Below, in pieces: positions 4,490 through 33,017 of a DNA stretch of 64,000 nucleotides (position 1 is the first letter of the stretch; each line of letters opens with the position of its first letter). The notes beneath the pieces are model-generated. The model was not told the DNA's origin, ran no database searches, and saw nothing but the letters and a program-made list of their open reading frames with translations. Source of the DNA: Neoconidiobolus thromboides FSU 785 (taxonomy: Eukaryota > Fungi > Entomophthoromycota). The stretch lies in assembly GCA_025603075.1 (NCBI GenBank), contig MU626303.1:59302-123301 (forward strand), in the 5' to 3' direction. The position numbers and the translations under genes were made by a program.

Positions 4490-5827
4490 ATGAGGACAAT
4501 ATTACGTACACCGATAGCATTAACATCTAAGATATTTAAACCAACTATAAAGTTTAACTTAACTTCAATCAATTATAAACTATATCAAAATAATCCATTA
4601 TTAATTACATTAACAAAACCCATAAACACTAAAGTAGAAGCCAATGAAACGTTACTTCCTAACAACAATCTCACCCCCACTCCTATTTCAAAACCATTTA
4701 CATTAAAGCCATATATGGAACTAGCACGTATGGATAAACCCATTGGTACCATGTTATTATTATGGCCATGTAGTAAGTAGCCATTATTAATTAAAAATTC
4801 TCCTTTAGTAATTGTTTGAAATATAGTTTGGAGTATTGGTATGGCTAGTTACCATCTTCAATCGGACCTCAGTACCATGCTTTACACTACTACTCTCTTT
4901 ACAACTGGTGCTTTTATCATGCGTGGTGCTGGTTGTACTATTAATGATTTATGGGATGTTAAATATGATAAAAAAATAGAAAGAACCAAGACACGACCAA
5001 TAGCAAGCGGAACACTAACTCGATATCAAGCGTTCAAATTTTTAGGAGTTCAATTATCCGCTGGTTTAGCTATTTTATTACAATTAAATAATTATTCTAT
5101 TGTATTAGGGGCATCATCTTTGGCTTTAGTTGTAATTTATCCATTGATGAAAAGGGTAACTTATTGGCCTCAGTTCACATTAGGTAAGTTAAGATATTAA
5201 AATTCTTATTTTAAAATGAAATAATTTAATTTCTAAATTAAACTTTTATAGGATTAGCTTTTAACTGGGGTGCTCTATTAGGTTGGTCTGCTATGGTAGG
5301 TCATTGCAATTGGAATATTGTATTACCATTATATTGTGCTGGTATATCTTGGACTTTAGTTTATGATACTATTTACGCTCATCAAGTAACCTTATTTAAC
5401 TAACCATTTATTTATCTTTAACCATGACCTTTTCCTTTTATTATAGGATAAACTTGATGACGTTAAAGTTGGAGTCAAATCTACTGCATTGTATATGGGT
5501 GATCAAACTAAATTCTATCTCTCTGGATTCAGTGCTATTACCCTATCTATGTTAACACTCTCTGGGTATTTAAATGGTCATGGAGTACCCTTCTTTTTAG
5601 GTACAATAATAGGTGGTGGTAGCCATTTATATTGGCAATTAAAAACAGTGGATTTAAATAATACCAAACAATGTTGGGAGAAATTTAAATCAAATAATAC
5701 ATTTGGGGCTATTATTGCAGCGGCCATTTTAGCCGATTTATTATGGTTGAAAATGGCCGAAGTTAAAGAAGAGAAAATGACCGAAGTTAAAGAAGAGAAA
5801 AGAATTAATAACGAATTAAAAGTTTAG
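4490..5827 (+). CDS. COQ2: 4-hydroxybenzoate polyprenyltransferase, mitochondrial (UbiA family)
   Basis: [67 protein letters not shown] and [12 protein letters not shown] motifs; basic N-terminal presequence; three introns. Confidence 0.97.
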
Positions 5828-6645
5828 CTATAAAATTAGATTTGTTTATTGTTTTATGTTTTTTAGTGCTACTTTTTAGTATGACGGTTTAAGGTACTTA
5901 TGAAGGGTTTTAATAAAGTTCATTTGATACTATAGGGTGAATATTTAATTAAATAGATTTGTATTATTATAATGAGATTTTAAAATTAAAAATTATACGT
6001 TTAATAAAATATCCATTACTATGATAAAAATATTAATGAATTACACTGTTAAAGTAATCATAAATCTTTTTGATAATAGAATTGATTAAACTAATACTCA
6101 TTATATTAAGTGTTAAATGCTTACTGTATCTTTTATCATTCATTATAGAAGTTTAAGCTTTGATACTTAATTAATAAGTTGAAATAAAATAATATACTAT
6201 TAATTTATATCATTATGCCTTTCTATACTTTAAATTATATATAAAGCTATGACAATATAAAAATAATGCTTTAAACATAAATTTCAAAATGCCAAACAAT
6301 TAAAATAAACATTAATCAGTATAATAGCTTTTTTGAAGAGAGTTCTATTAATATGTGTAAATATGATACAAACTGATAAATATTAATAGGTTGGATTTTT
6401 AAAAAATTAACAATATTGAACTAATAAGTTAAATACATTAAACTATGTTATTTTAAATTTTTTAGTCAGTCTTGTTATACATTAATCATCATATTTGTTA
6501 GCTAAATTATGAAAAAATAGGACGATTAATGTGAAATAGATTGAATAAACTAATAACGACACTTCTAATTTATTTCCTTAATTAGCTATCAAAGAATCCC
6601 AAAATTGGTCATCCAACTCCTTTTTAAATTGTTGAAATTAAATGT

Positions 6646-6742
6646 GGGAGTGTTTTTTGGTTTCATTACTTTTTCCATTTTTTGAGTGCTATTTAAGTGG
6701 AAAAATCGTTAGCAAAATTATTAAACAAAAAAATACATCCTC
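6646..6742 (+). mobile_element. MITE family copy 1, immediately upstream of ORC1
   Basis: GGGAGTGTTTTTTGGTTTCATTAC...AAAAAAATACATCCTC matches the ~100-bp consensus seen 14 times in the window. Confidence 0.85.
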
Positions 6743-6786
6743 ATACTAATTTATTATCAATTTCTAAAACTTAGATTGAATTTACT

Positions 6787-9700
6787 ATGAATCAAAATAA
6801 TAATTCAATCAACTTAGCTGTAGATAATGATATTAATACTCAACAAGAGCAAATCATGGATGGTGATCAACCTCAGCAACTTACAAAAAAGAAAGATGGA
6901 CCAAAGAAAGGTAGACCAAAGAAAGCGAATTTAAATGGAAATAAACAAAATGTCAATATTGACGGTAAAGATGTTTCAAATGGAGTAAATGAGCTTGAAA
7001 AGAATATTGGTAAAGATAATGAAGCAACCAAGGTTAATAATGCAATTAAGAAAAGAGGGAGACCAAAGAAAACGGTATTAAATGTAGATGAAAAAAATGA
7101 TGCTAAGAGTAAAGATAAAGGTATAATAAAAGAGAGTAGAGTAGTAGATGAAGAAGATAAAGTGGATAGTAACAAAGATAAAGTAGGATATAATAAAGAT
7201 GGAGTAGATGATAATGGAGATAATAAATTAACTAACAATAATACAGTTAATAAACGAGGTAGACCAAAGAAAGTAACTTTTGATATAGTTGATAATGAAA
7301 AAGAAACAAATGAAGATGGTATAAAAGGCAACAGTGAAAAGAAAAAACGAGGAAAAATCGCGAAGAGCGATTTAAAAGAAGTAAAAGATAATGAAGTAAA
7401 CGAAAACGTCATTAAAAATGATTCCAAAAAGAAGAAATTAGGTATAACAAAGAAAATTATTTTAGATAAAGTTAATGATAAAGAGAAGTTAAAAGAGAAT
7501 GTTATTAAAAATAACAATGAAGTTAAAAAAAAAGGTAGACCAAAGAAAACAAATTTGAGTGAAATAAAAGCTAATAAGGGTATTAGTATTGTTTTATTAG
7601 ATCAAACAGAAAACCCAATTTTACTAAATAAAAATCAAGACGAAGAAACTTTCAACATAATTCCAACTAGTGATAAAGATAAATCAATCGAGGTAAATAA
7701 AAAACATATAGAAAATACTCAATTGAGTGGCATTATTGAAAAAAAAGGACGAGGTAGACCAAAGAAAAATGAGATAAGTAAACTAATAATTGGTAGGAAC
7801 ATTATCATTATTTTTATTAAATTTAATCAAAGATTTAATTTTATTAGATAAAAGTAAAGATAATGAAGCTTTTAATGTAATTACGATTACTCACCCAGAG
7901 AACACAACTGAAGTAAATCATGAAAATATAGAGGATAACATATCAAATGAAACTATTGAAAAGAAAGGACGAGGTAGACCGAAATTAAATAAAGAATTGA
8001 TGCCACTTGCTAATATCAAAGATATTGGTTTACCAGCTATTATTGTAAAAAAGAGAGGACGACCATCATTAAAATCAAAACTTAATGCTATGCTTAATAC
8101 TAATGGTAAAAAGAAACGTGGAAGGCCAAAGCTTTTGGATCAAAATTCAATAGTAAATATTGCTAATTTGAAAAATCGACTTGGGTTGAGTGATAATATT
8201 GGAAATAATCCAGTTAAAAAAAGAGGTAGACCACGTAAAGATGAGGGTCTAGTTGAAACAACTGTTGATAATACAGAGAAATTAATTAATAGTAAGTTTT
8301 TAATTTTTAGTTTTAATTTGCTTATAAATTAATGATTTTTTAGCTATTCAAATAATTGAAGAATTAGAAAATCAAAGAGGGATTGAAAAGGATCAAAATG
8401 AAAATCAAGAGAAAGAAACTGAAAAAGAAGTTGAAAATACATCTTACATCAATCGTAGTATGGAAGACAGTATTCAATATCAAGAAATTCGTAAAAAATT
8501 ACATGTATCTAATATACCAGAAGAATTACCAGGTAGAGAAAAAGAGTATCAAGAAATATTAATTCATTTATCATCAGCTATTAAAGATAAGGTTTCATGT
8601 TGTTTATGTAATAAGATTTAACACAGTAATTTTGTATGAGCAATTATTGATGTCATTTTTTTAGATATTGCTGGTGTACCAGGTACAGGTAAAACAGTAA
8701 CAGTTAAAAAAGTGATTAATAAATTGGAACAATCAGCTAAATTAAAGGTATAGTAAATATGTATACTATCTAATAATAATAAGTTGTATTTAATTAAAAA
8801 AATATTACAGAAACTTGAAGCATTCAATTATTTAGAAATCAATGGAATGCAATTAAGTGAGCCCAATCAAATCTATTCTAAATTATGGCAAGCATTTACT
8901 GGGGATAAATTTTCAGATATGCATGCTTTAAATTGTTTAAATGAATATTTTGAAGATAAAAGAAAAATTCAAAATAATAAACTATGGTAAATAATAAATG
9001 ATAATAAATAACAAATAATAAATAACAATAAATAATAATTTAATAGGGTCATAGTTATTGATGAATTAGATTTATTAATGAATAAAAGTCAAAGTATATT
9101 ATATAATTTATTTGAATGGCCATTTAAAAAACATGGTAAAATGGTATTAATAACAATAGCAAATACAATGGATTTACCAGAAAGATTATTGGAAAATAAA
9201 GTAGCATCAAGATTAGGATTAACACGAGTATTATTTAATCCATATACATTTCAGCAATTACAAATTATTATCCAACATCGATTATCTCAATTTAATGTAT
9301 TTTATGATGATGGTAAATATTCAATTTTAATAGAATTAAAGTTAAAAATATTAATATTAATAAAACTTGTTTTTATTTATTTATTTTAGGTGGTATTGAA
9401 ATTTGTTCACGTAAAGTAGCCGCTATCTCTGGGGATGCTAGAAGAGTCTTAGATATTTGTAGGTAAAGCAAAGAAATTAGTTGGTATATTGTAATAATCC
9501 TGAATATTAACTTTTAAATAACATAGGAGAGCAGTTGAAATATTAGAAAATGATATTGAATTTCAATACAAAAACAAATTAAGTATTAAATTAATTAATA
9601 CAGTAATTAAAGAAATGTATCAAAGTCCAATAATTAAAGTCATACAAACAATTAATTTATATCAAAAATTAATATTAATTGCATTTAAAATATTAAATCA

Positions 9701-9956
9701 ACAAAATCAATTAATTGAATATGAAGTTAATGAATTATTATTATGTTTTTTAAATTTATCTTATTTTGTTAAAAAAAATCAAAAAGTCATTAAAGGGGAT
9801 TTTTTAAAGAATTTAGCTTTTCTTGTTGATTCAGGTTTAATTCATAATTCTACTCAACCTAAATTATCAATTCATTCCCTTATTTCGTTGAGTTTTAGAG
9901 TTGAGGATATTGCTATTGCACTTAAAAATAGTCCTGAATTAAGTATCTATTTTTAA
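6787..9956 (+). CDS. ORC1: Origin recognition complex subunit 1 with an N-terminal array of nine AT-hooks
   Basis: Phase-compatible introns (7778 or 7793 to 7847; 8292-8343; further introns downstream) join the GRP-repeat exons to LHVSNIPEELPGREKE, YIAGVPGTGKT (Walker A), EINGMQLSEPNQIYSKLW, IDELDLL (Walker B), YNLFEWP, ANTMDLPERLLENKVASRLGLTR and RKVAAISGDARRVLDICRRAVE, then a winged-helix-like C-terminus. These motifs fit ORC1 better than CDC6. Confidence 0.9.
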
Positions 9957-10000
9957 TAAATAAAATAAAGTAATAAAAAATGTTATTTATTTATTTATTT

Positions 10001-17123: not shown

Positions 17124-17234
17124 GGGGATGTTTTTTTTGGCTTCATTACTTTTTCCATTTTTTAAGCGCTATTTGAGTGGAAAAATTGTTAATAAAATTG
17201 TTAATAAAATTGTTAAACATAAAAATACATCCCC
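17124..17234 (+). mobile_element. MITE family copy 3 (carries a 12-bp internal tandem duplication)
   Basis: ATAT-GGGGATG...CATCCCC-ATAT; AATAAAATTGTT is duplicated internally. Confidence 0.9.
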
Positions 17235-17379: not shown

Positions 17380-17478
17380 GAGAGTGTTTTTTTTGACTTC
17401 ATTATTTTTTCCATTTTTTAAGCGCTATTTAAGCGGAAAGTTTGTTAGTAAAATTCTTAAACACAAAAATACATCCCC
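17380..17478 (+). mobile_element. MITE family copy 4
   Basis: ATAT-GAGAGTG...CATCCCC-ATAT; near-identical to the reverse complement of copy 5. Confidence 0.9.
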
Positions 17479-17934
17479 ATATATTAATAATTTGTTATAA
17501 TTTATAATTTTATATAAAGAAATATAAAAAAGTATAAAGATAATTTTTAATAAAAATTTTGTAAACTCTATTTTTTTGCTAATAACTAATAATAATTTAT
17601 TTAAATAAATTTTGAAAGCAGCTTTGTTAGTTAATTTGAATTAGAATTACTGATTTGTTATTAAATAATTAATTAAATAATTTTAAATTGATTATTAAAA
17701 GTGTATTAAACTATTTTTAATATCATTTACTTAAATTTACCTGTAATTTTAAACTTATTGCTTTTAAATTATTATTATAATATATAATAATTTCTATAAA
17801 TTTTTTTTTTAAACTGTTATAAATTTGTAAACTTTGTTGATTTGATTTTTTTAAGTATACAATTAAAATTTTTATTTTAAACTTTAATCTATAAGCCTAA
17901 TATTTGTTCTTTATTTTTTCATTTTTTTATATAT

Positions 17935-25218: not shown

Positions 25219-26508
25219 TCAAATTCCACCAACTTTACCTAACTTAAATGGTCTGCCTCTTTTTTTCTTAACAGTTGTATCAGCTGATTTATTATTACCT
25301 ACATTACCCTTATTCACCTCATTTGGACTACCCTTATCAGTATTTATAGGCGTATTGGGATCCTCATTGCTTTGATCTTTACTTGATGAAATACCCTCAT
25401 TATCACCACTATCTTTTACGCCACCTAAATCTCCTTTCCTTGGTCTTCCTTTTTTCTTCTTTTCACCATCATTTTTAATAGCACTATCATTCAACTCATC
25501 ATTATTCATCTTATCCGAAACTTTTTTTTTTGGCCTTCCCCTTTTTTTTGTATTGTCACTTTTGATAGCACTTTCATTCAATTCTTCAGTAACTTTAGCT
25601 TCATTCAAACCGATTTTCTTTGGCCTTCCTCTTCCTTTCTTTTCAGTATCGTTTTTAATAATACCCTTATTTAATTCCTCAGTATTATTCTTAATAATTG
25701 TCTCATTTAATACTTCACTATGATTGATATCTTCAGGAGTGGTTCTCTTCGGTCTTCCTCTTCCTCTTTTTTCTGTATTAATAATAGCACTTTGATTTAA
25801 TTCTTCGGCACCATTGATATCTTTAAGAATGATCTTCTTTGGTCTTCCTCTTCCTTTCACTTCGTTATCATATTTAACAATAGTTCCATTTAATGCTTCA
25901 TTATTGTCTTTAATAATACCTTTATTTAATTTTCCAGTATCATCCGCCTTTTCTGAGACGACTCTCTTTGGCCTCCCTCTTCTTTTCTTTCCTGTAGTAA
26001 TACCAATAACATCTTCATTCAAAAATGCACTCTTATCCTTAACAATACTTACATTCAAAGCTTCTCTATCATATTTGATATCACTTTTATCTGATACTTC
26101 AATATTAGCCTCCTTTTGAGTAACGGCTTTCTTTGGTCTACCTCTTCGCTTCTTTTCTGTGTTAGTACTAATAGCACTTTTAATTAATTCTCCTTCATTA
26201 GTTTTACCTGAAGTGATTTTCTTTGGCCTGCCTCTTCCTTTCTTTTCGGCACTATCTTTAATAATACTTTCATCTGATTGTTCTCTATCATTAACAATAC
26301 TAAAAACGACTTTCTTTGGTCTTCCCCTTCCTTTCTTTTCAGTATCATTAACAATAGGGCTTTTATTTAATGCCTCACTATCACTCACATTTTTAGAAAC
26401 AATTTTCTTTGGTCTTCCCCTCTTTTTTATTGGCTCTTGAACTTGTTGATTATCGTCACCTTCATCTAGGTCTAGATCTGTTTTTGTTGAAACTTTACTT
26501 ATTCCCAT
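25219..26508 (-). CDS. Free-standing AT-hook array protein (11 GRP hooks, HMGA-like), paralogous to the ORC1 N-terminus
   Basis: Intronless 429-aa ORF with 11 (K/R)GRP(K/R/F) motifs separated by N/D/E/K/S-rich spacers; no other recognisable domain. Confidence 0.85.
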   Translation of the reverse strand: MGISKVSTKTDLDLDEGDDNQQVQEPIKKRGRPKKIVSKNVSDSEALNKSPIVNDTEKKGRGRPKKVVFSIVNDREQSDESIIKDSAEKKGRGRPKKITSGKTNEGELIKSAISTNTEKKRRGRPKKAVTQKEANIEVSDKSDIKYDREALNVSIVKDKSAFLNEDVIGITTGKKRRGRPKRVVSEKADDTGKLNKGIIKDNNEALNGTIVKYDNEVKGRGRPKKIILKDINGAEELNQSAIINTEKRGRGRPKRTTPEDINHSEVLNETIIKNNTEELNKGIIKNDTEKKGRGRPKKIGLNEAKVTEELNESAIKSDNTKKRGRPKKKVSDKMNNDELNDSAIKNDGEKKKKGRPRKGDLGGVKDSGDNEGISSSKDQSNEDPNTPINTDKGSPNEVNKGNVGNNKSADTTVKKKRGRPFKLGKVGGI

Positions 26509-32919: not shown

Positions 32920-33017
32920 GGGGATGTTTTTTTGATTTCATTACTTTTTCCATGTTTTAAGCACTATTTGAGTAGAATAATTGTTAGTAAAATTCTTAAA
33001 TAAAAAAATACATCCCC
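32920..33017 (+). mobile_element. MITE family copy 9
   Basis: ATAT-GGGGATG...CATCCCC-ATGT, upstream of MATE paralog B. Confidence 0.9.

What the first reader, a model, noticed from the sequence alone, without database searches (positions are those of the whole stretch)
6787..9956. ORC1 carrying nine AT-hooks in place of a BAH domain: an Orc4-like DNA tether on a different ORC subunit
Seen: about 500 aa of low-complexity N-terminus with nine (K/R)GRP(K/R/S) motifs, five in exon 1 and four in exon 2, plus two decayed ones (KKKRGKIAK, KKKKLGITKK). Phase-compatible GT-AG introns (to 7847, and 8292-8343) join it directly to a complete ORC1 AAA+/winged-helix core. No BAH-like globular sequence is visible. 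Established: budding-yeast and metazoan Orc1 begin with a BAH domain, and S. pombe ORC binds AT-rich origins through nine AT-hooks on Orc4. Inference: this very AT-rich fungus may have independently evolved AT-hook origin selection by putting the array on Orc1 and dropping nucleosome reading by BAH. I cannot confirm that this is undescribed.
Basis: partly seen in the sequence, partly recalled or inferred. Interest (0 to 1): 0.82.

Follow-up and report, generated by a model that had tools for sequence, protein, structure and literature searches.

The report
Fungal ORC1 with nine AT-hooks
In this very AT-rich insect-pathogenic fungus, the largest subunit of the complex that marks DNA replication start sites has a long floppy head with nine small AT-DNA-gripping motifs and lacks the usual nucleosome-reading domain; this is real and missing from the public annotation, but the same idea has already been described for a sponge.

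Summary
An 8-exon gene (6787-9956, +) encodes a 913-aa protein. Residues 1-483 are a K/N/D/E-rich region, very probably disordered, with nine canonical GRP AT-hooks and two decayed ones. Residues 484-913 are a complete ORC1 AAA+/lid/winged-helix core.

One 2903-nt RNA contig with no mismatches spans the 5'UTR to the 3'UTR with all seven introns removed, so hooks and core lie on one mRNA. The core is ORC1, not CDC6. No BAH is found by Pfam or by a more sensitive ORC1-BAH profile, and there is no coding room upstream. GenBank holds only a 289-aa partial core; the hook exons are unannotated.

- BAH is also missing in every other Entomophthoromycotina ORC1 sampled (Massospora, a Logan transcript, Basidiobolus) and in Mucorales. 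The loss therefore probably predates the hook array.
- Basidiobolus ORC1 has three hooks and Massospora none, so nine is a local expansion.
- AT-hook arrays on Orc1 are already published: seven in a sponge, degenerate ones in an echinoderm and in S. pombe Orc1 (Adiji 2024).

The tether function is inferred, not tested, and Orc4 could not be examined. I rate it a new member of a known kind, of moderate interest.

The parts
6787..7792 (+). Exon 1 (aa 1-335): first part of the AT-hook N-terminal region. GRP cores at 6910-6918, 7057-7065, 7258-7266, 7534-7542 and 7753-7761. Decayed hooks at 7339-7365 (KKKRGKIAK) and 7426-7455 (KKKKLGITKK).
   Evidence: Pfam AT_hook E=2e-4. AF2 mean pLDDT 43 with no fold. 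An in-frame stop lies 15 nt upstream of the ATG and the transcript contig has no upstream ATG.
7793..7847 (+). Intron 1 (55 nt, GT..AG, phase 1)
   Evidence: The splice joint is seen in RNA contigs of runs X1, X2 and X5 (table 5).
7848..8291 (+). Exon 2 (aa 336-483): second part of the AT-hook region. GRP cores at 7973-7981, 8057-8065, 8120-8128 and 8225-8233.
   Evidence: Pfam AT_hook E=2.5e-8. In the divergent haplotype or species, the listed substitutions are 11 non-synonymous and 6 synonymous, and none falls in a hook.
8292..8343 (+). Intron 2 (52 nt, GT..AG, phase 1). It joins the AT-hook region to the ORC1 core.
   Evidence: The splice joint is seen in runs X1, X2, X5 and X6.
8344..8607 (+). 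Exon 3 (aa 484-571): acidic linker and start of the AAA+ domain (LHVSNIPEELPGRE...)
8665..8747 (+). Exon 4: Walker A, GVPGTGKT (8673-8696)
   Evidence: Pfam AAA; invariant columns in alignments A1 and A2.
8811..8986 (+). Exon 5: AAA+ middle part
   Evidence: It is contiguous in RNA contig X1 record 1 (table 8).
9047..9312 (+). Exon 6: Walker B DELD (9060-9071), sensor-1 region IANTMDLPER
   Evidence: Against the PDB by phmmer: human ORC1 105 bits, human CDC6 59 bits. Pfam AAA.
9390..9462 (+). Exon 7: AAA+ lid with SGDARR (sensor 2)
   Evidence: Pfam AAA_lid_10 E=2.5e-6.
9527..9956 (+). Exon 8: end of the lid plus the C-terminal winged-helix domain, and the stop codon
   Evidence: Colinear with the Cdc6_C region of P0018 and with ten fungal ORC1 C-termini. 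The AF2 model has pLDDT 83. The top PDB fold matches are Orc1 chains, and the human ORC1 winged-helix domain matches with TM 0.91 and rmsd 1.5 A.
6653..6745 (.). Copy of a ~93-nt dispersed repeat in the 5'UTR/promoter. The mRNA contig begins inside it, at 6662.
   Evidence: At least 10 copies in the window. RNA word depth there is in the thousands (table 2). The true 5' end of the mRNA is therefore undefined.

Best explanation
This is the ORC1 orthologue of Neoconidiobolus thromboides. Its ATPase/winged-helix core is complete and should take the usual Orc1 place in the ORC ring. In front of the core, where most ORC1s have a BAH domain plus a disordered linker, it has a ~480-aa basic, K/N-rich, apparently disordered region carrying nine canonical AT-hooks.

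Inferred mechanism: each hook lies in the minor groove of a short A/T tract. Nine hooks on one flexible chain give strong multivalent, ATP-independent binding to long AT-rich stretches. This tethers ORC to chromatin before the AAA+/WH ring encircles DNA. It is the two-step scheme shown for S. pombe Orc4 and for metazoan Orc1 IDRs. The region has no [ST]P site, so tethering is probably not switched off by CDK.

History: BAH was probably lost earlier in the lineage, and the hook array then expanded here by tandem duplication of a ~30-aa unit.

Shown here: gene model, single mRNA, orthology, absence of BAH, hook motifs, and distribution among relatives. Inferred: DNA binding, AT preference, and a role in ORC recruitment or origin choice.
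For: - Gene model and reading frame.
- One spliced 2903-nt RNA contig from 6662 to 9974 with 0 mismatches.
- ORC1 rather than CDC6: a 289-aa core piece scores 260/242/194 bits with human/fly/yeast ORC1 against 151/108/86 bits with their CDC6.
- Tree: the core groups with the Entomophthorales ORC1s (Massospora, P0018) at 100/99 support.
- Winged-helix fold.
- AT_hook above the Pfam threshold; 9 GRP against 0.047 expected.
- No BAH: Pfam at E<=1. An ORC1-BAH profile that does find the Pfam-negative BAH of Neocallimastigomycota (E 1e-7 to 1e-9) gives nothing for this N-terminus or for the six frames of 5800-8400. There is no ORF of 40 aa or more in 5828-6786.
- Disorder: only 4 aromatic residues in 483; pLDDT 43.
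- Hook cores are untouched and one hook codon changes synonymously in the divergent alleles, while the spacers change freely.
- Precedent for the mechanism: SpOrc4 hooks and the metazoan Orc1 IDR tether, including a seven-hook sponge Orc1 IDR (PMC11077064).
- Basidiobolus ORC1-A has three hooks and no BAH.
Against: - No binding or localisation data exist for this protein.
- The window is 26% GC. If the genome is similar, A/T tracts are almost everywhere, so hooks may add affinity rather than site choice.
- The closest relatives (Massospora, Logan P0018) manage with a ~100-aa N-terminus, no hooks and no BAH. The array is therefore not needed for ORC function in the order.
- Neocallimastigomycota ORC1s have no hooks.
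- The spacers evolve almost neutrally.
- The 5' end of the mRNA is not mapped, because the contig starts in a repeat.
- Contigs cannot exclude an additional shorter isoform.
- Orc4 of this fungus was not seen.
Confidence: 0.62

Rival explanations
1. The hook array is mostly a by-product of low-complexity expansion in an AT-rich genome. K, N and I codons are favoured and the repeat unit duplicates easily. On this view the array gives only generic nuclear or chromatin affinity (NLS-like, mitotic chromosome retention) and plays no part in choosing origins.
For: The composition is 18% K and 14.5% N. Two hooks have already decayed. Spacers show 11 non-synonymous against 6 synonymous changes between alleles. 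The nearest relatives have no hooks at all. A free-standing 11-hook gene with the same 30-31-aa period lies 18 kb away. Other AT-hook proteins have been noted in this genome.
Against: Nine intact canonical cores against 0.047 expected by chance. No listed allele difference touches a hook core, and one is a synonymous change inside a hook. Basidiobolus keeps three hooks at conserved positions in two species. Hook arrays on ORC subunits have been shown to work in S. pombe (PMC11077064).
Confidence: 0.25
2. The N-terminus serves a heterochromatin or silencing role, a task often carried by the Orc1 BAH or IDR, by targeting ORC1 to AT-rich satellite or repeat DNA. This would resemble Drosophila D1 rather than replication licensing.
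For: In fly cells the sponge Orc1 IDR with AT-hooks gave punctate chromosomal foci that the authors speculate are pericentromeric heterochromatin (PMC11077064). The window is rich in dispersed repeats and extreme A/T islands.
Against: Nothing in the sequence points to it: Pfam found no chromodomain-binding motif or silencing-partner domain in the N-terminal exons. It is also not exclusive of the tether model.
Confidence: 0.08
3. Artefact: two neighbouring genes (an AT-hook protein and an ORC1 core gene starting near Met 8460) wrongly joined, or the core is a CDC6.
For: The public annotation has only a 289-aa partial core model and nothing over the hook exons. A contig alone cannot prove that every transcript is full length.
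Against: One RNA contig with 0 mismatches crosses both junctions, with GT..AG introns removed in frame. The exon 2-exon 3 junction is also seen in three other runs. Exon 3 upstream of Met 8460 stays in frame. ORC1 scores exceed CDC6 scores by 100 bits or more in each of three species.
Confidence: 0.03

Closest known systems
Amphimedon queenslandica (sponge) Orc1 IDR with seven AT-hooks; degenerate hooks in echinoderm and S. pombe Orc1 (Adiji et al., NAR 2024, PMC11077064)
   Same: An array of canonical RGRP AT-hooks sits in the disordered region N-terminal to the Orc1 AAA+ domain. In the paper, DNA binding by the sponge IDR was not altered by CDK2/CycE phosphorylation; here the region has no [ST]P site at all.
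   Different: The sponge protein apparently keeps its BAH domain: the paper lists BAH loss only for tardigrades and flatworms. The protein here has nine hooks, no BAH, is fungal, and has no experimental data.
Schizosaccharomyces pombe Orc4 N-terminal domain with nine AT-hooks (Chuang and Kelly 1999; Lee et al. 2001; cited in PMC11077064 and PMC7560902)
   Same: Nine AT-hooks on a long N-terminal extension of an AAA+ ORC subunit, in a fungus whose intergenic DNA is AT-rich. The two-step tether-then-encircle model is the template for the mechanism proposed here.
   Different: A different subunit (Orc4 rather than Orc1), with no sequence relationship between the two extensions. SpOrc4 has been tested biochemically and genetically; this protein has not.
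Basidiobolus ranarum / B. meristosporus ORC1 copy A (KAK9768150.1; K493DRAFT_403449)
   Same: Same subphylum. No BAH. A ~310-aa basic N-terminal region with three canonical hooks at conserved positions.
   Different: Three hooks rather than nine. Many TP/SP sites lie next to the hooks, whereas this protein has none. The N-termini cannot be aligned. Basidiobolus also has a second, hook-less ORC1 copy.
Canonical fungal and metazoan ORC1 (BAH + IDR + AAA+ + WH), e.g. S. cerevisiae and human ORC1, Coemansia, Mortierella
   Same: AAA+/lid/WH core with Walker A/B and SGDARR. PDB ORC1 chains are the best sequence and fold matches.
   Different: No BAH, so none of the BAH-mediated nucleosome contact described for Orc1 is expected. 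The core sits on a very long branch (2.35) and has a skewed composition.

Membership tests
ORC1 (origin recognition complex subunit 1) | AAA+ ATPase module with Walker A (GxxGxGKT), Walker B (DExD), sensor motifs and lid | tested here: met
   GVPGTGKT, VIDELD, IANTMDLPER and SGDARR are present. Pfam AAA and AAA_lid_10 hit the exon pieces. These are invariant columns shared with fungal ORC1s.
ORC1 (origin recognition complex subunit 1) | C-terminal winged-helix domain of the Cdc6/Orc1 type | tested here: met
   Pfam and phmmer on the exon alone found nothing. However, the exon is colinear with ORC1 winged-helix domains, the AF2 model has pLDDT 83, and Orc1 chains top the PDB fold search, with TM 0.91 to the human ORC1 winged-helix domain.
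ORC1 (origin recognition complex subunit 1) | Closer to ORC1 than to its paralogue CDC6 | tested here: met
   260/242/194 bits to human/fly/yeast ORC1 against 151/108/86 bits to their CDC6. The core sits inside a clade of fungal ORC1s. No tree with CDC6 sequences could be built, because no CDC6 sequences were retrievable.
ORC1 (origin recognition complex subunit 1) | N-terminal BAH domain (typical of the family, not universal) | tested here: not met
   No Pfam BAH at E<=1. No hit with an ORC1-specific BAH profile at E<=10 in the N-terminus or in the six frames of 5800-8400. BAH is likewise absent in Basidiobolus, Massospora, P0018 and Mucorales, so it is not required for membership.
AT-hook motif (Pfam PF02178) | GRP core flanked by basic residues, scoring above the family threshold | tested here: met
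   Nine [KR]x0-1GRP[KRS] sites. Pfam gives 21.3 and 33.3 bits against a cut-off of 17.4.
AT-hook ORC tether (S. pombe Orc4 type; sponge Orc1 IDR type) | The hook array lies in a disordered extension of an ORC AAA+ subunit, on the same polypeptide | tested here: met
   A single spliced mRNA contig. Low-complexity composition and pLDDT 43.
AT-hook ORC tether (S. pombe Orc4 type; sponge Orc1 IDR type) | ATP-independent, AT-preferring DNA binding that is needed for chromatin association or origin use | not testable with these tools
   Needs EMSA or fluorescence polarisation, ChIP and genetics.

The most novel reading that the evidence does not exclude
After the ancestor of the Entomophthoromycotina lost the Orc1 BAH domain, N. 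thromboides built a nine-hook array on Orc1. It used the same 30-31-aa repeat unit found in a free-standing multi-AT-hook chromatin protein 18 kb away. Orc4 carries no hooks, so Orc1 alone directs ORC constitutively (no CDK sites in the region) to long A/T tracts. This would be a third, independent invention of AT-hook-based ORC targeting, after S. pombe Orc4 and sponge Orc1. It would also give a natural 0 / 3 / 9-hook series (Massospora, Basidiobolus, Neoconidiobolus) for asking how BAH-less ORCs find chromatin.
Probability: 0.25. Interest if true: 0.6.

Novelty: new member of a known kind. Interest (0 to 1): 0.42.

Why it matters
How ORC finds its sites without a DNA consensus is an open question. 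Disordered tethers, such as the S. pombe Orc4 hooks and metazoan Orc1 IDRs, are the current answer.

This gene adds a fungal Orc1 with as many hooks as SpOrc4 and with no BAH. The hook exons lie under no gene model in the public annotation, and no matching protein turned up in the database search. Its relatives show BAH-less Orc1s with zero, three and nine hooks. That pattern supports recurrent gain of AT-hook tethers on ORC, or their ancient presence as Adiji et al. speculated.

It also offers a defined 483-aa module that could be tested by domain swaps in S. pombe or Drosophila. It does not reveal a new principle.

Tried and rejected
- A whole-database protein search with exon 1 (335 aa) gave nothing at E<=1e-6. 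No orthologue of that length was found, and the free-standing paralogue was not recovered at database scale.
- Pfam and PDB phmmer on the last exon alone found no winged helix. This was resolved with an alignment, AF2 and Foldseek.
- The full 913-aa protein could not be given to any tool, because the spliced product has no single reference. Exon pieces and the public 289-aa fragment P0001 were used instead.
- An ORC1/CDC6 tree was not possible, and Orc4 of this fungus could not be examined.
- An upstream BAH exon was rejected: there is no ORF of 40 aa or more in 5828-6786, an in-frame stop lies 15 nt before the ATG, and the profile search was negative.
- Recent transfer of DNA between ORC1 exon 1 and the free-standing AT-hook gene was rejected: nucleotide identity is only 66-70% over 130-246 nt.
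- The poly(A)-like loose end at 7533 lies on an internal A10 run and was taken as an artefact.
- Literature searches for ORC with Entomophthoromycotina, Conidiobolus with AT-hook, and Orc1/BAH with early-diverging fungi found no prior description.
Full report
**Gene model.** The window is 26% GC. From the ATG at 6787 an open frame runs 335 codons. Seven short GT..AG introns (52-77 nt) then link eight exons: 6787-7792, 7848-8291, 8344-8607, 8665-8747, 8811-8986, 9047-9312, 9390-9462 and 9527-9956. Together they form a 2742-nt CDS encoding 913 aa.

The upstream gene is a UbiA/COQ2-type prenyltransferase that ends near 5827. No ORF of 40 aa or more lies between it and 6787 on either strand. Within the transcribed leader an in-frame stop lies 15 nt before the ATG, and there is no upstream ATG.

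**RNA support.** Eight RNA runs hold the stretch. In run X1 a single 2903-nt contig with no mismatches lies on 6662-7791, 7847-8291, 8344-8607, 8665-8745, 8809-8985, 9046-9311, 9389-9459 and 9524-9974, in unbroken record coordinates. That is the predicted mRNA with all seven introns removed (tables 5 and 8). Other runs show the same joints.

Two caveats apply:
- The contig starts inside a ~93-nt dispersed repeat (6653-6745, at least 10 copies in the window), so the true 5' end is unknown.
- Contigs cannot exclude a minor shorter isoform.

**N-terminus.** Residues 1-483 are 18% K, 14.5% N, 8% D and 8% E, with only four aromatic residues. Nine GRP cores flanked by K/R lie at aa 42, 91, 158, 250, 323, 378, 406, 427 and 462. 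Two decayed copies (KKKRGKIAK, KKKKLGITKK) lie at aa 185-193 and 214-223.
- Shuffling the 483 residues gives 0.047 GRP on average and never more than 2.
- Pfam AT_hook passes its gathering score in both exons.
- AF2 on exon 1, run on the single sequence, gives pLDDT 43 and no fold. This is consistent with disorder, though a single-sequence model is weak evidence by itself.
- There is no [ST]P site in the region.
- Hooks 3 and 4 and the two decayed hooks between them are spaced 31, 30 and 31 residues apart.
- The segments before hooks 5 and 6 are duplicates of each other across intron 1.

The array therefore grew by tandem duplication.

**No BAH.**
- Pfam finds none at E<=1.
- I built a profile from the N-termini of 25 BAH-bearing ORC1s. 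It detects the degenerate, Pfam-negative BAH of Neocallimastigomycota at E 1e-7 to 1e-9.
- The same profile gives no hit at E<=10 for this N-terminus or for any six-frame ORF in 5800-8400.

**Core.** The public 289-aa fragment P0001 is an exact piece of the protein. It scores 260, 242 and 194 bits with human, fly and yeast ORC1, against 151, 108 and 86 bits with their CDC6. Exon 6 alone gives the same order. Walker A, Walker B, the sensor-1 region and SGDARR are present.

The last exon is too diverged for Pfam. It nevertheless aligns end to end with ORC1 winged-helix domains. It folds with pLDDT 83 and matches Orc1 chains best in the PDB, with TM 0.91 and rmsd 1.5 A to the human ORC1 winged-helix domain.

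In a maximum-likelihood tree the core groups with Massospora cicadina ORC1 and a Logan transcript (P0018) at 100/99 support, on a very long and compositionally deviant branch.

**Public annotation.** The genome is Neoconidiobolus thromboides, GCA_025603075.1, contig MU626303.1. The only model here is KAI9296147.1, 'P-loop NTPase, partial', 289 aa. The 2.7 kb between the UbiA gene and that model, which holds the hook exons, carries no gene. A search with exon 1 found nothing.

**Relatives.**
- Closest cores: P0018 is 494 aa and its ORF is complete, with an in-frame stop upstream. Massospora ORC1 is 491 aa. Both have N-termini of about 100 aa with no hooks and no BAH.
- Basidiobolus: the ORC1-A copies of B. 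ranarum and B. meristosporus have a ~310-aa basic N-terminus with three canonical hooks at conserved positions, many TP/SP sites and no BAH. A second copy, B, has no hooks.
- BAH retained: Kickxellomycotina, Mortierellomycotina, Endogonales and some chytrids (Geranomyces, Borealophlyctis).
- BAH absent: Mucorales and Umbelopsis.
- Across 274 proteins retrieved in these searches (nearly all ORC1 homologues, from many eukaryotes), only five have two or more canonical hooks, and none has more than three: two Basidiobolus, the hemichordate Ptychodera, a mayfly and one Logan protein.

BAH loss therefore appears shared by the subphylum, while the nine-hook array is a local expansion.

**Allelic variation.** Runs of 'organism B' carry both the window's sequence and a haplotype about 10% different in exon 2. 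'Organism C' carries only the divergent form. Among the listed differences:
- Exon 2 has 11 non-synonymous and 6 synonymous changes. None lies in a hook core, and one is a synonymous change inside hook 9.
- The core has 3 non-synonymous and 18 synonymous changes.

Only 40 of 102 differences were listed, so this is indicative only.

**A possible source of the module.** A free-standing 429-aa protein (25219-26508, minus strand) has 11 hooks at a 30-31-aa period. Its spacer consensus, (E)LNxxxIKxDxEKKGRGRPKK, resembles the ORC1 unit. Pairwise BLASTP gives E 4e-14. DNA identity is only 66-70%. This could reflect an old shared origin or convergence of low-complexity repeats; I cannot decide between them.

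**Literature.** Adiji et al. (NAR 2024, PMC11077064) report the following:
- seven AT-hooks in the sponge Orc1 IDR;
- degenerate hooks in echinoderm and S. pombe Orc1;
- BAH loss in tardigrades and flatworms;
- a proposal that an AT-hook IDR may be ancestral to Orc1 IDRs;
- evidence that the metazoan Orc1 IDR is the functional analogue of the SpOrc4 hook domain in a two-step tether-then-encircle mechanism.

Hu et al. 2020 (PMC7560902) note Orc4 AT-hooks in many fungi. I found nothing on ORC in Entomophthoromycotina, or on AT-hook ORC1 in fungi beyond the single S. pombe motif.

**Verdict.** The most likely function is an ATP-independent, multivalent AT-DNA tether for ORC. This rests on analogy with tested systems, not on data for this protein.

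The claims of a BAH-for-hooks swap and of a new subunit location are weakened by two results: BAH is already missing in hook-less relatives, and the sponge Orc1 case is published. The AT-rich-genome rationale is also doubtful. Neocallimastigomycota ORC1s have no hooks, and I recall those genomes as extremely AT-rich, which I did not check here. In addition, in DNA as AT-rich as this window A/T tracts give little positional information.

This is a new fungal, BAH-less, nine-hook member of a known kind, and it is absent from the public annotation.

Noticed in passing
window 6653-6745 (copies e.g. at 17389-17481, 17133-17204, 32928-33015, 18024-17932, 10613-10526, 49767-49676): A ~93-nt dispersed repeat sits in the ORC1 leader/promoter. 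There are at least 10 copies at 83-89% identity in this window, and RNA word depth over it is in the thousands in all four runs. RNA contigs break at it.
   Followed up: partly
window 25219-26508 (- strand): An intronless 429-aa protein with 11 canonical AT-hooks at a regular 30-31-aa period. Its spacer consensus resembles ORC1 aa 150-260 (BLASTP E 4e-14), but DNA identity is only 66-70%. Whether it is transcribed, and whether it has relatives, was not checked.
   Followed up: partly
window about 8499-9686; GCA_025603075.1 contig MU626303.1: The public gene model for this locus (KAI9296147.1) is a 289-aa partial core. The 2.7 kb upstream that holds the AT-hook exons has no gene model.
   Followed up: yes
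window 7847-9940 (RNA runs X2, X5, X6): Runs of 'organism B' contain two ORC1 haplotypes about 10% apart in exon 2, one identical to the window. 'Organism C' has only the divergent one, with an in-frame 12-nt deletion at 8409. This could be strain mixture, heterozygosity or a sister species; it was not resolved.
   Followed up: partly
P0074/P0192 versus P0278/P0235 (Basidiobolus ranarum and B. meristosporus): Both Basidiobolus species have two ORC1 paralogues. Copy A has a 310-aa N-terminus with three AT-hooks; copy B is shorter and has none. The 1021-aa B. meristosporus model also carries PF12923 and PF17799, which are not ORC1 domains, so it looks like an annotation fusion with the next gene.
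   Followed up: partly
P0243, P0257, P0254, P0251 and about 40 other Mucorales/Umbelopsis ORC1s: ORC1 of Mucorales and Umbelopsis is 510-620 aa and has no BAH by Pfam or by the ORC1-BAH profile. Endogonales (Jimgerdemannia) and Mortierellomycotina keep it. I found no paper describing this loss.
   Followed up: partly
window 4490-5827 (+): The upstream neighbour is a multi-exon UbiA/COQ2-type 4-hydroxybenzoate polyprenyltransferase. The downstream neighbour, on the minus strand, is a ubiquitin-conjugating enzyme.
   Followed up: no
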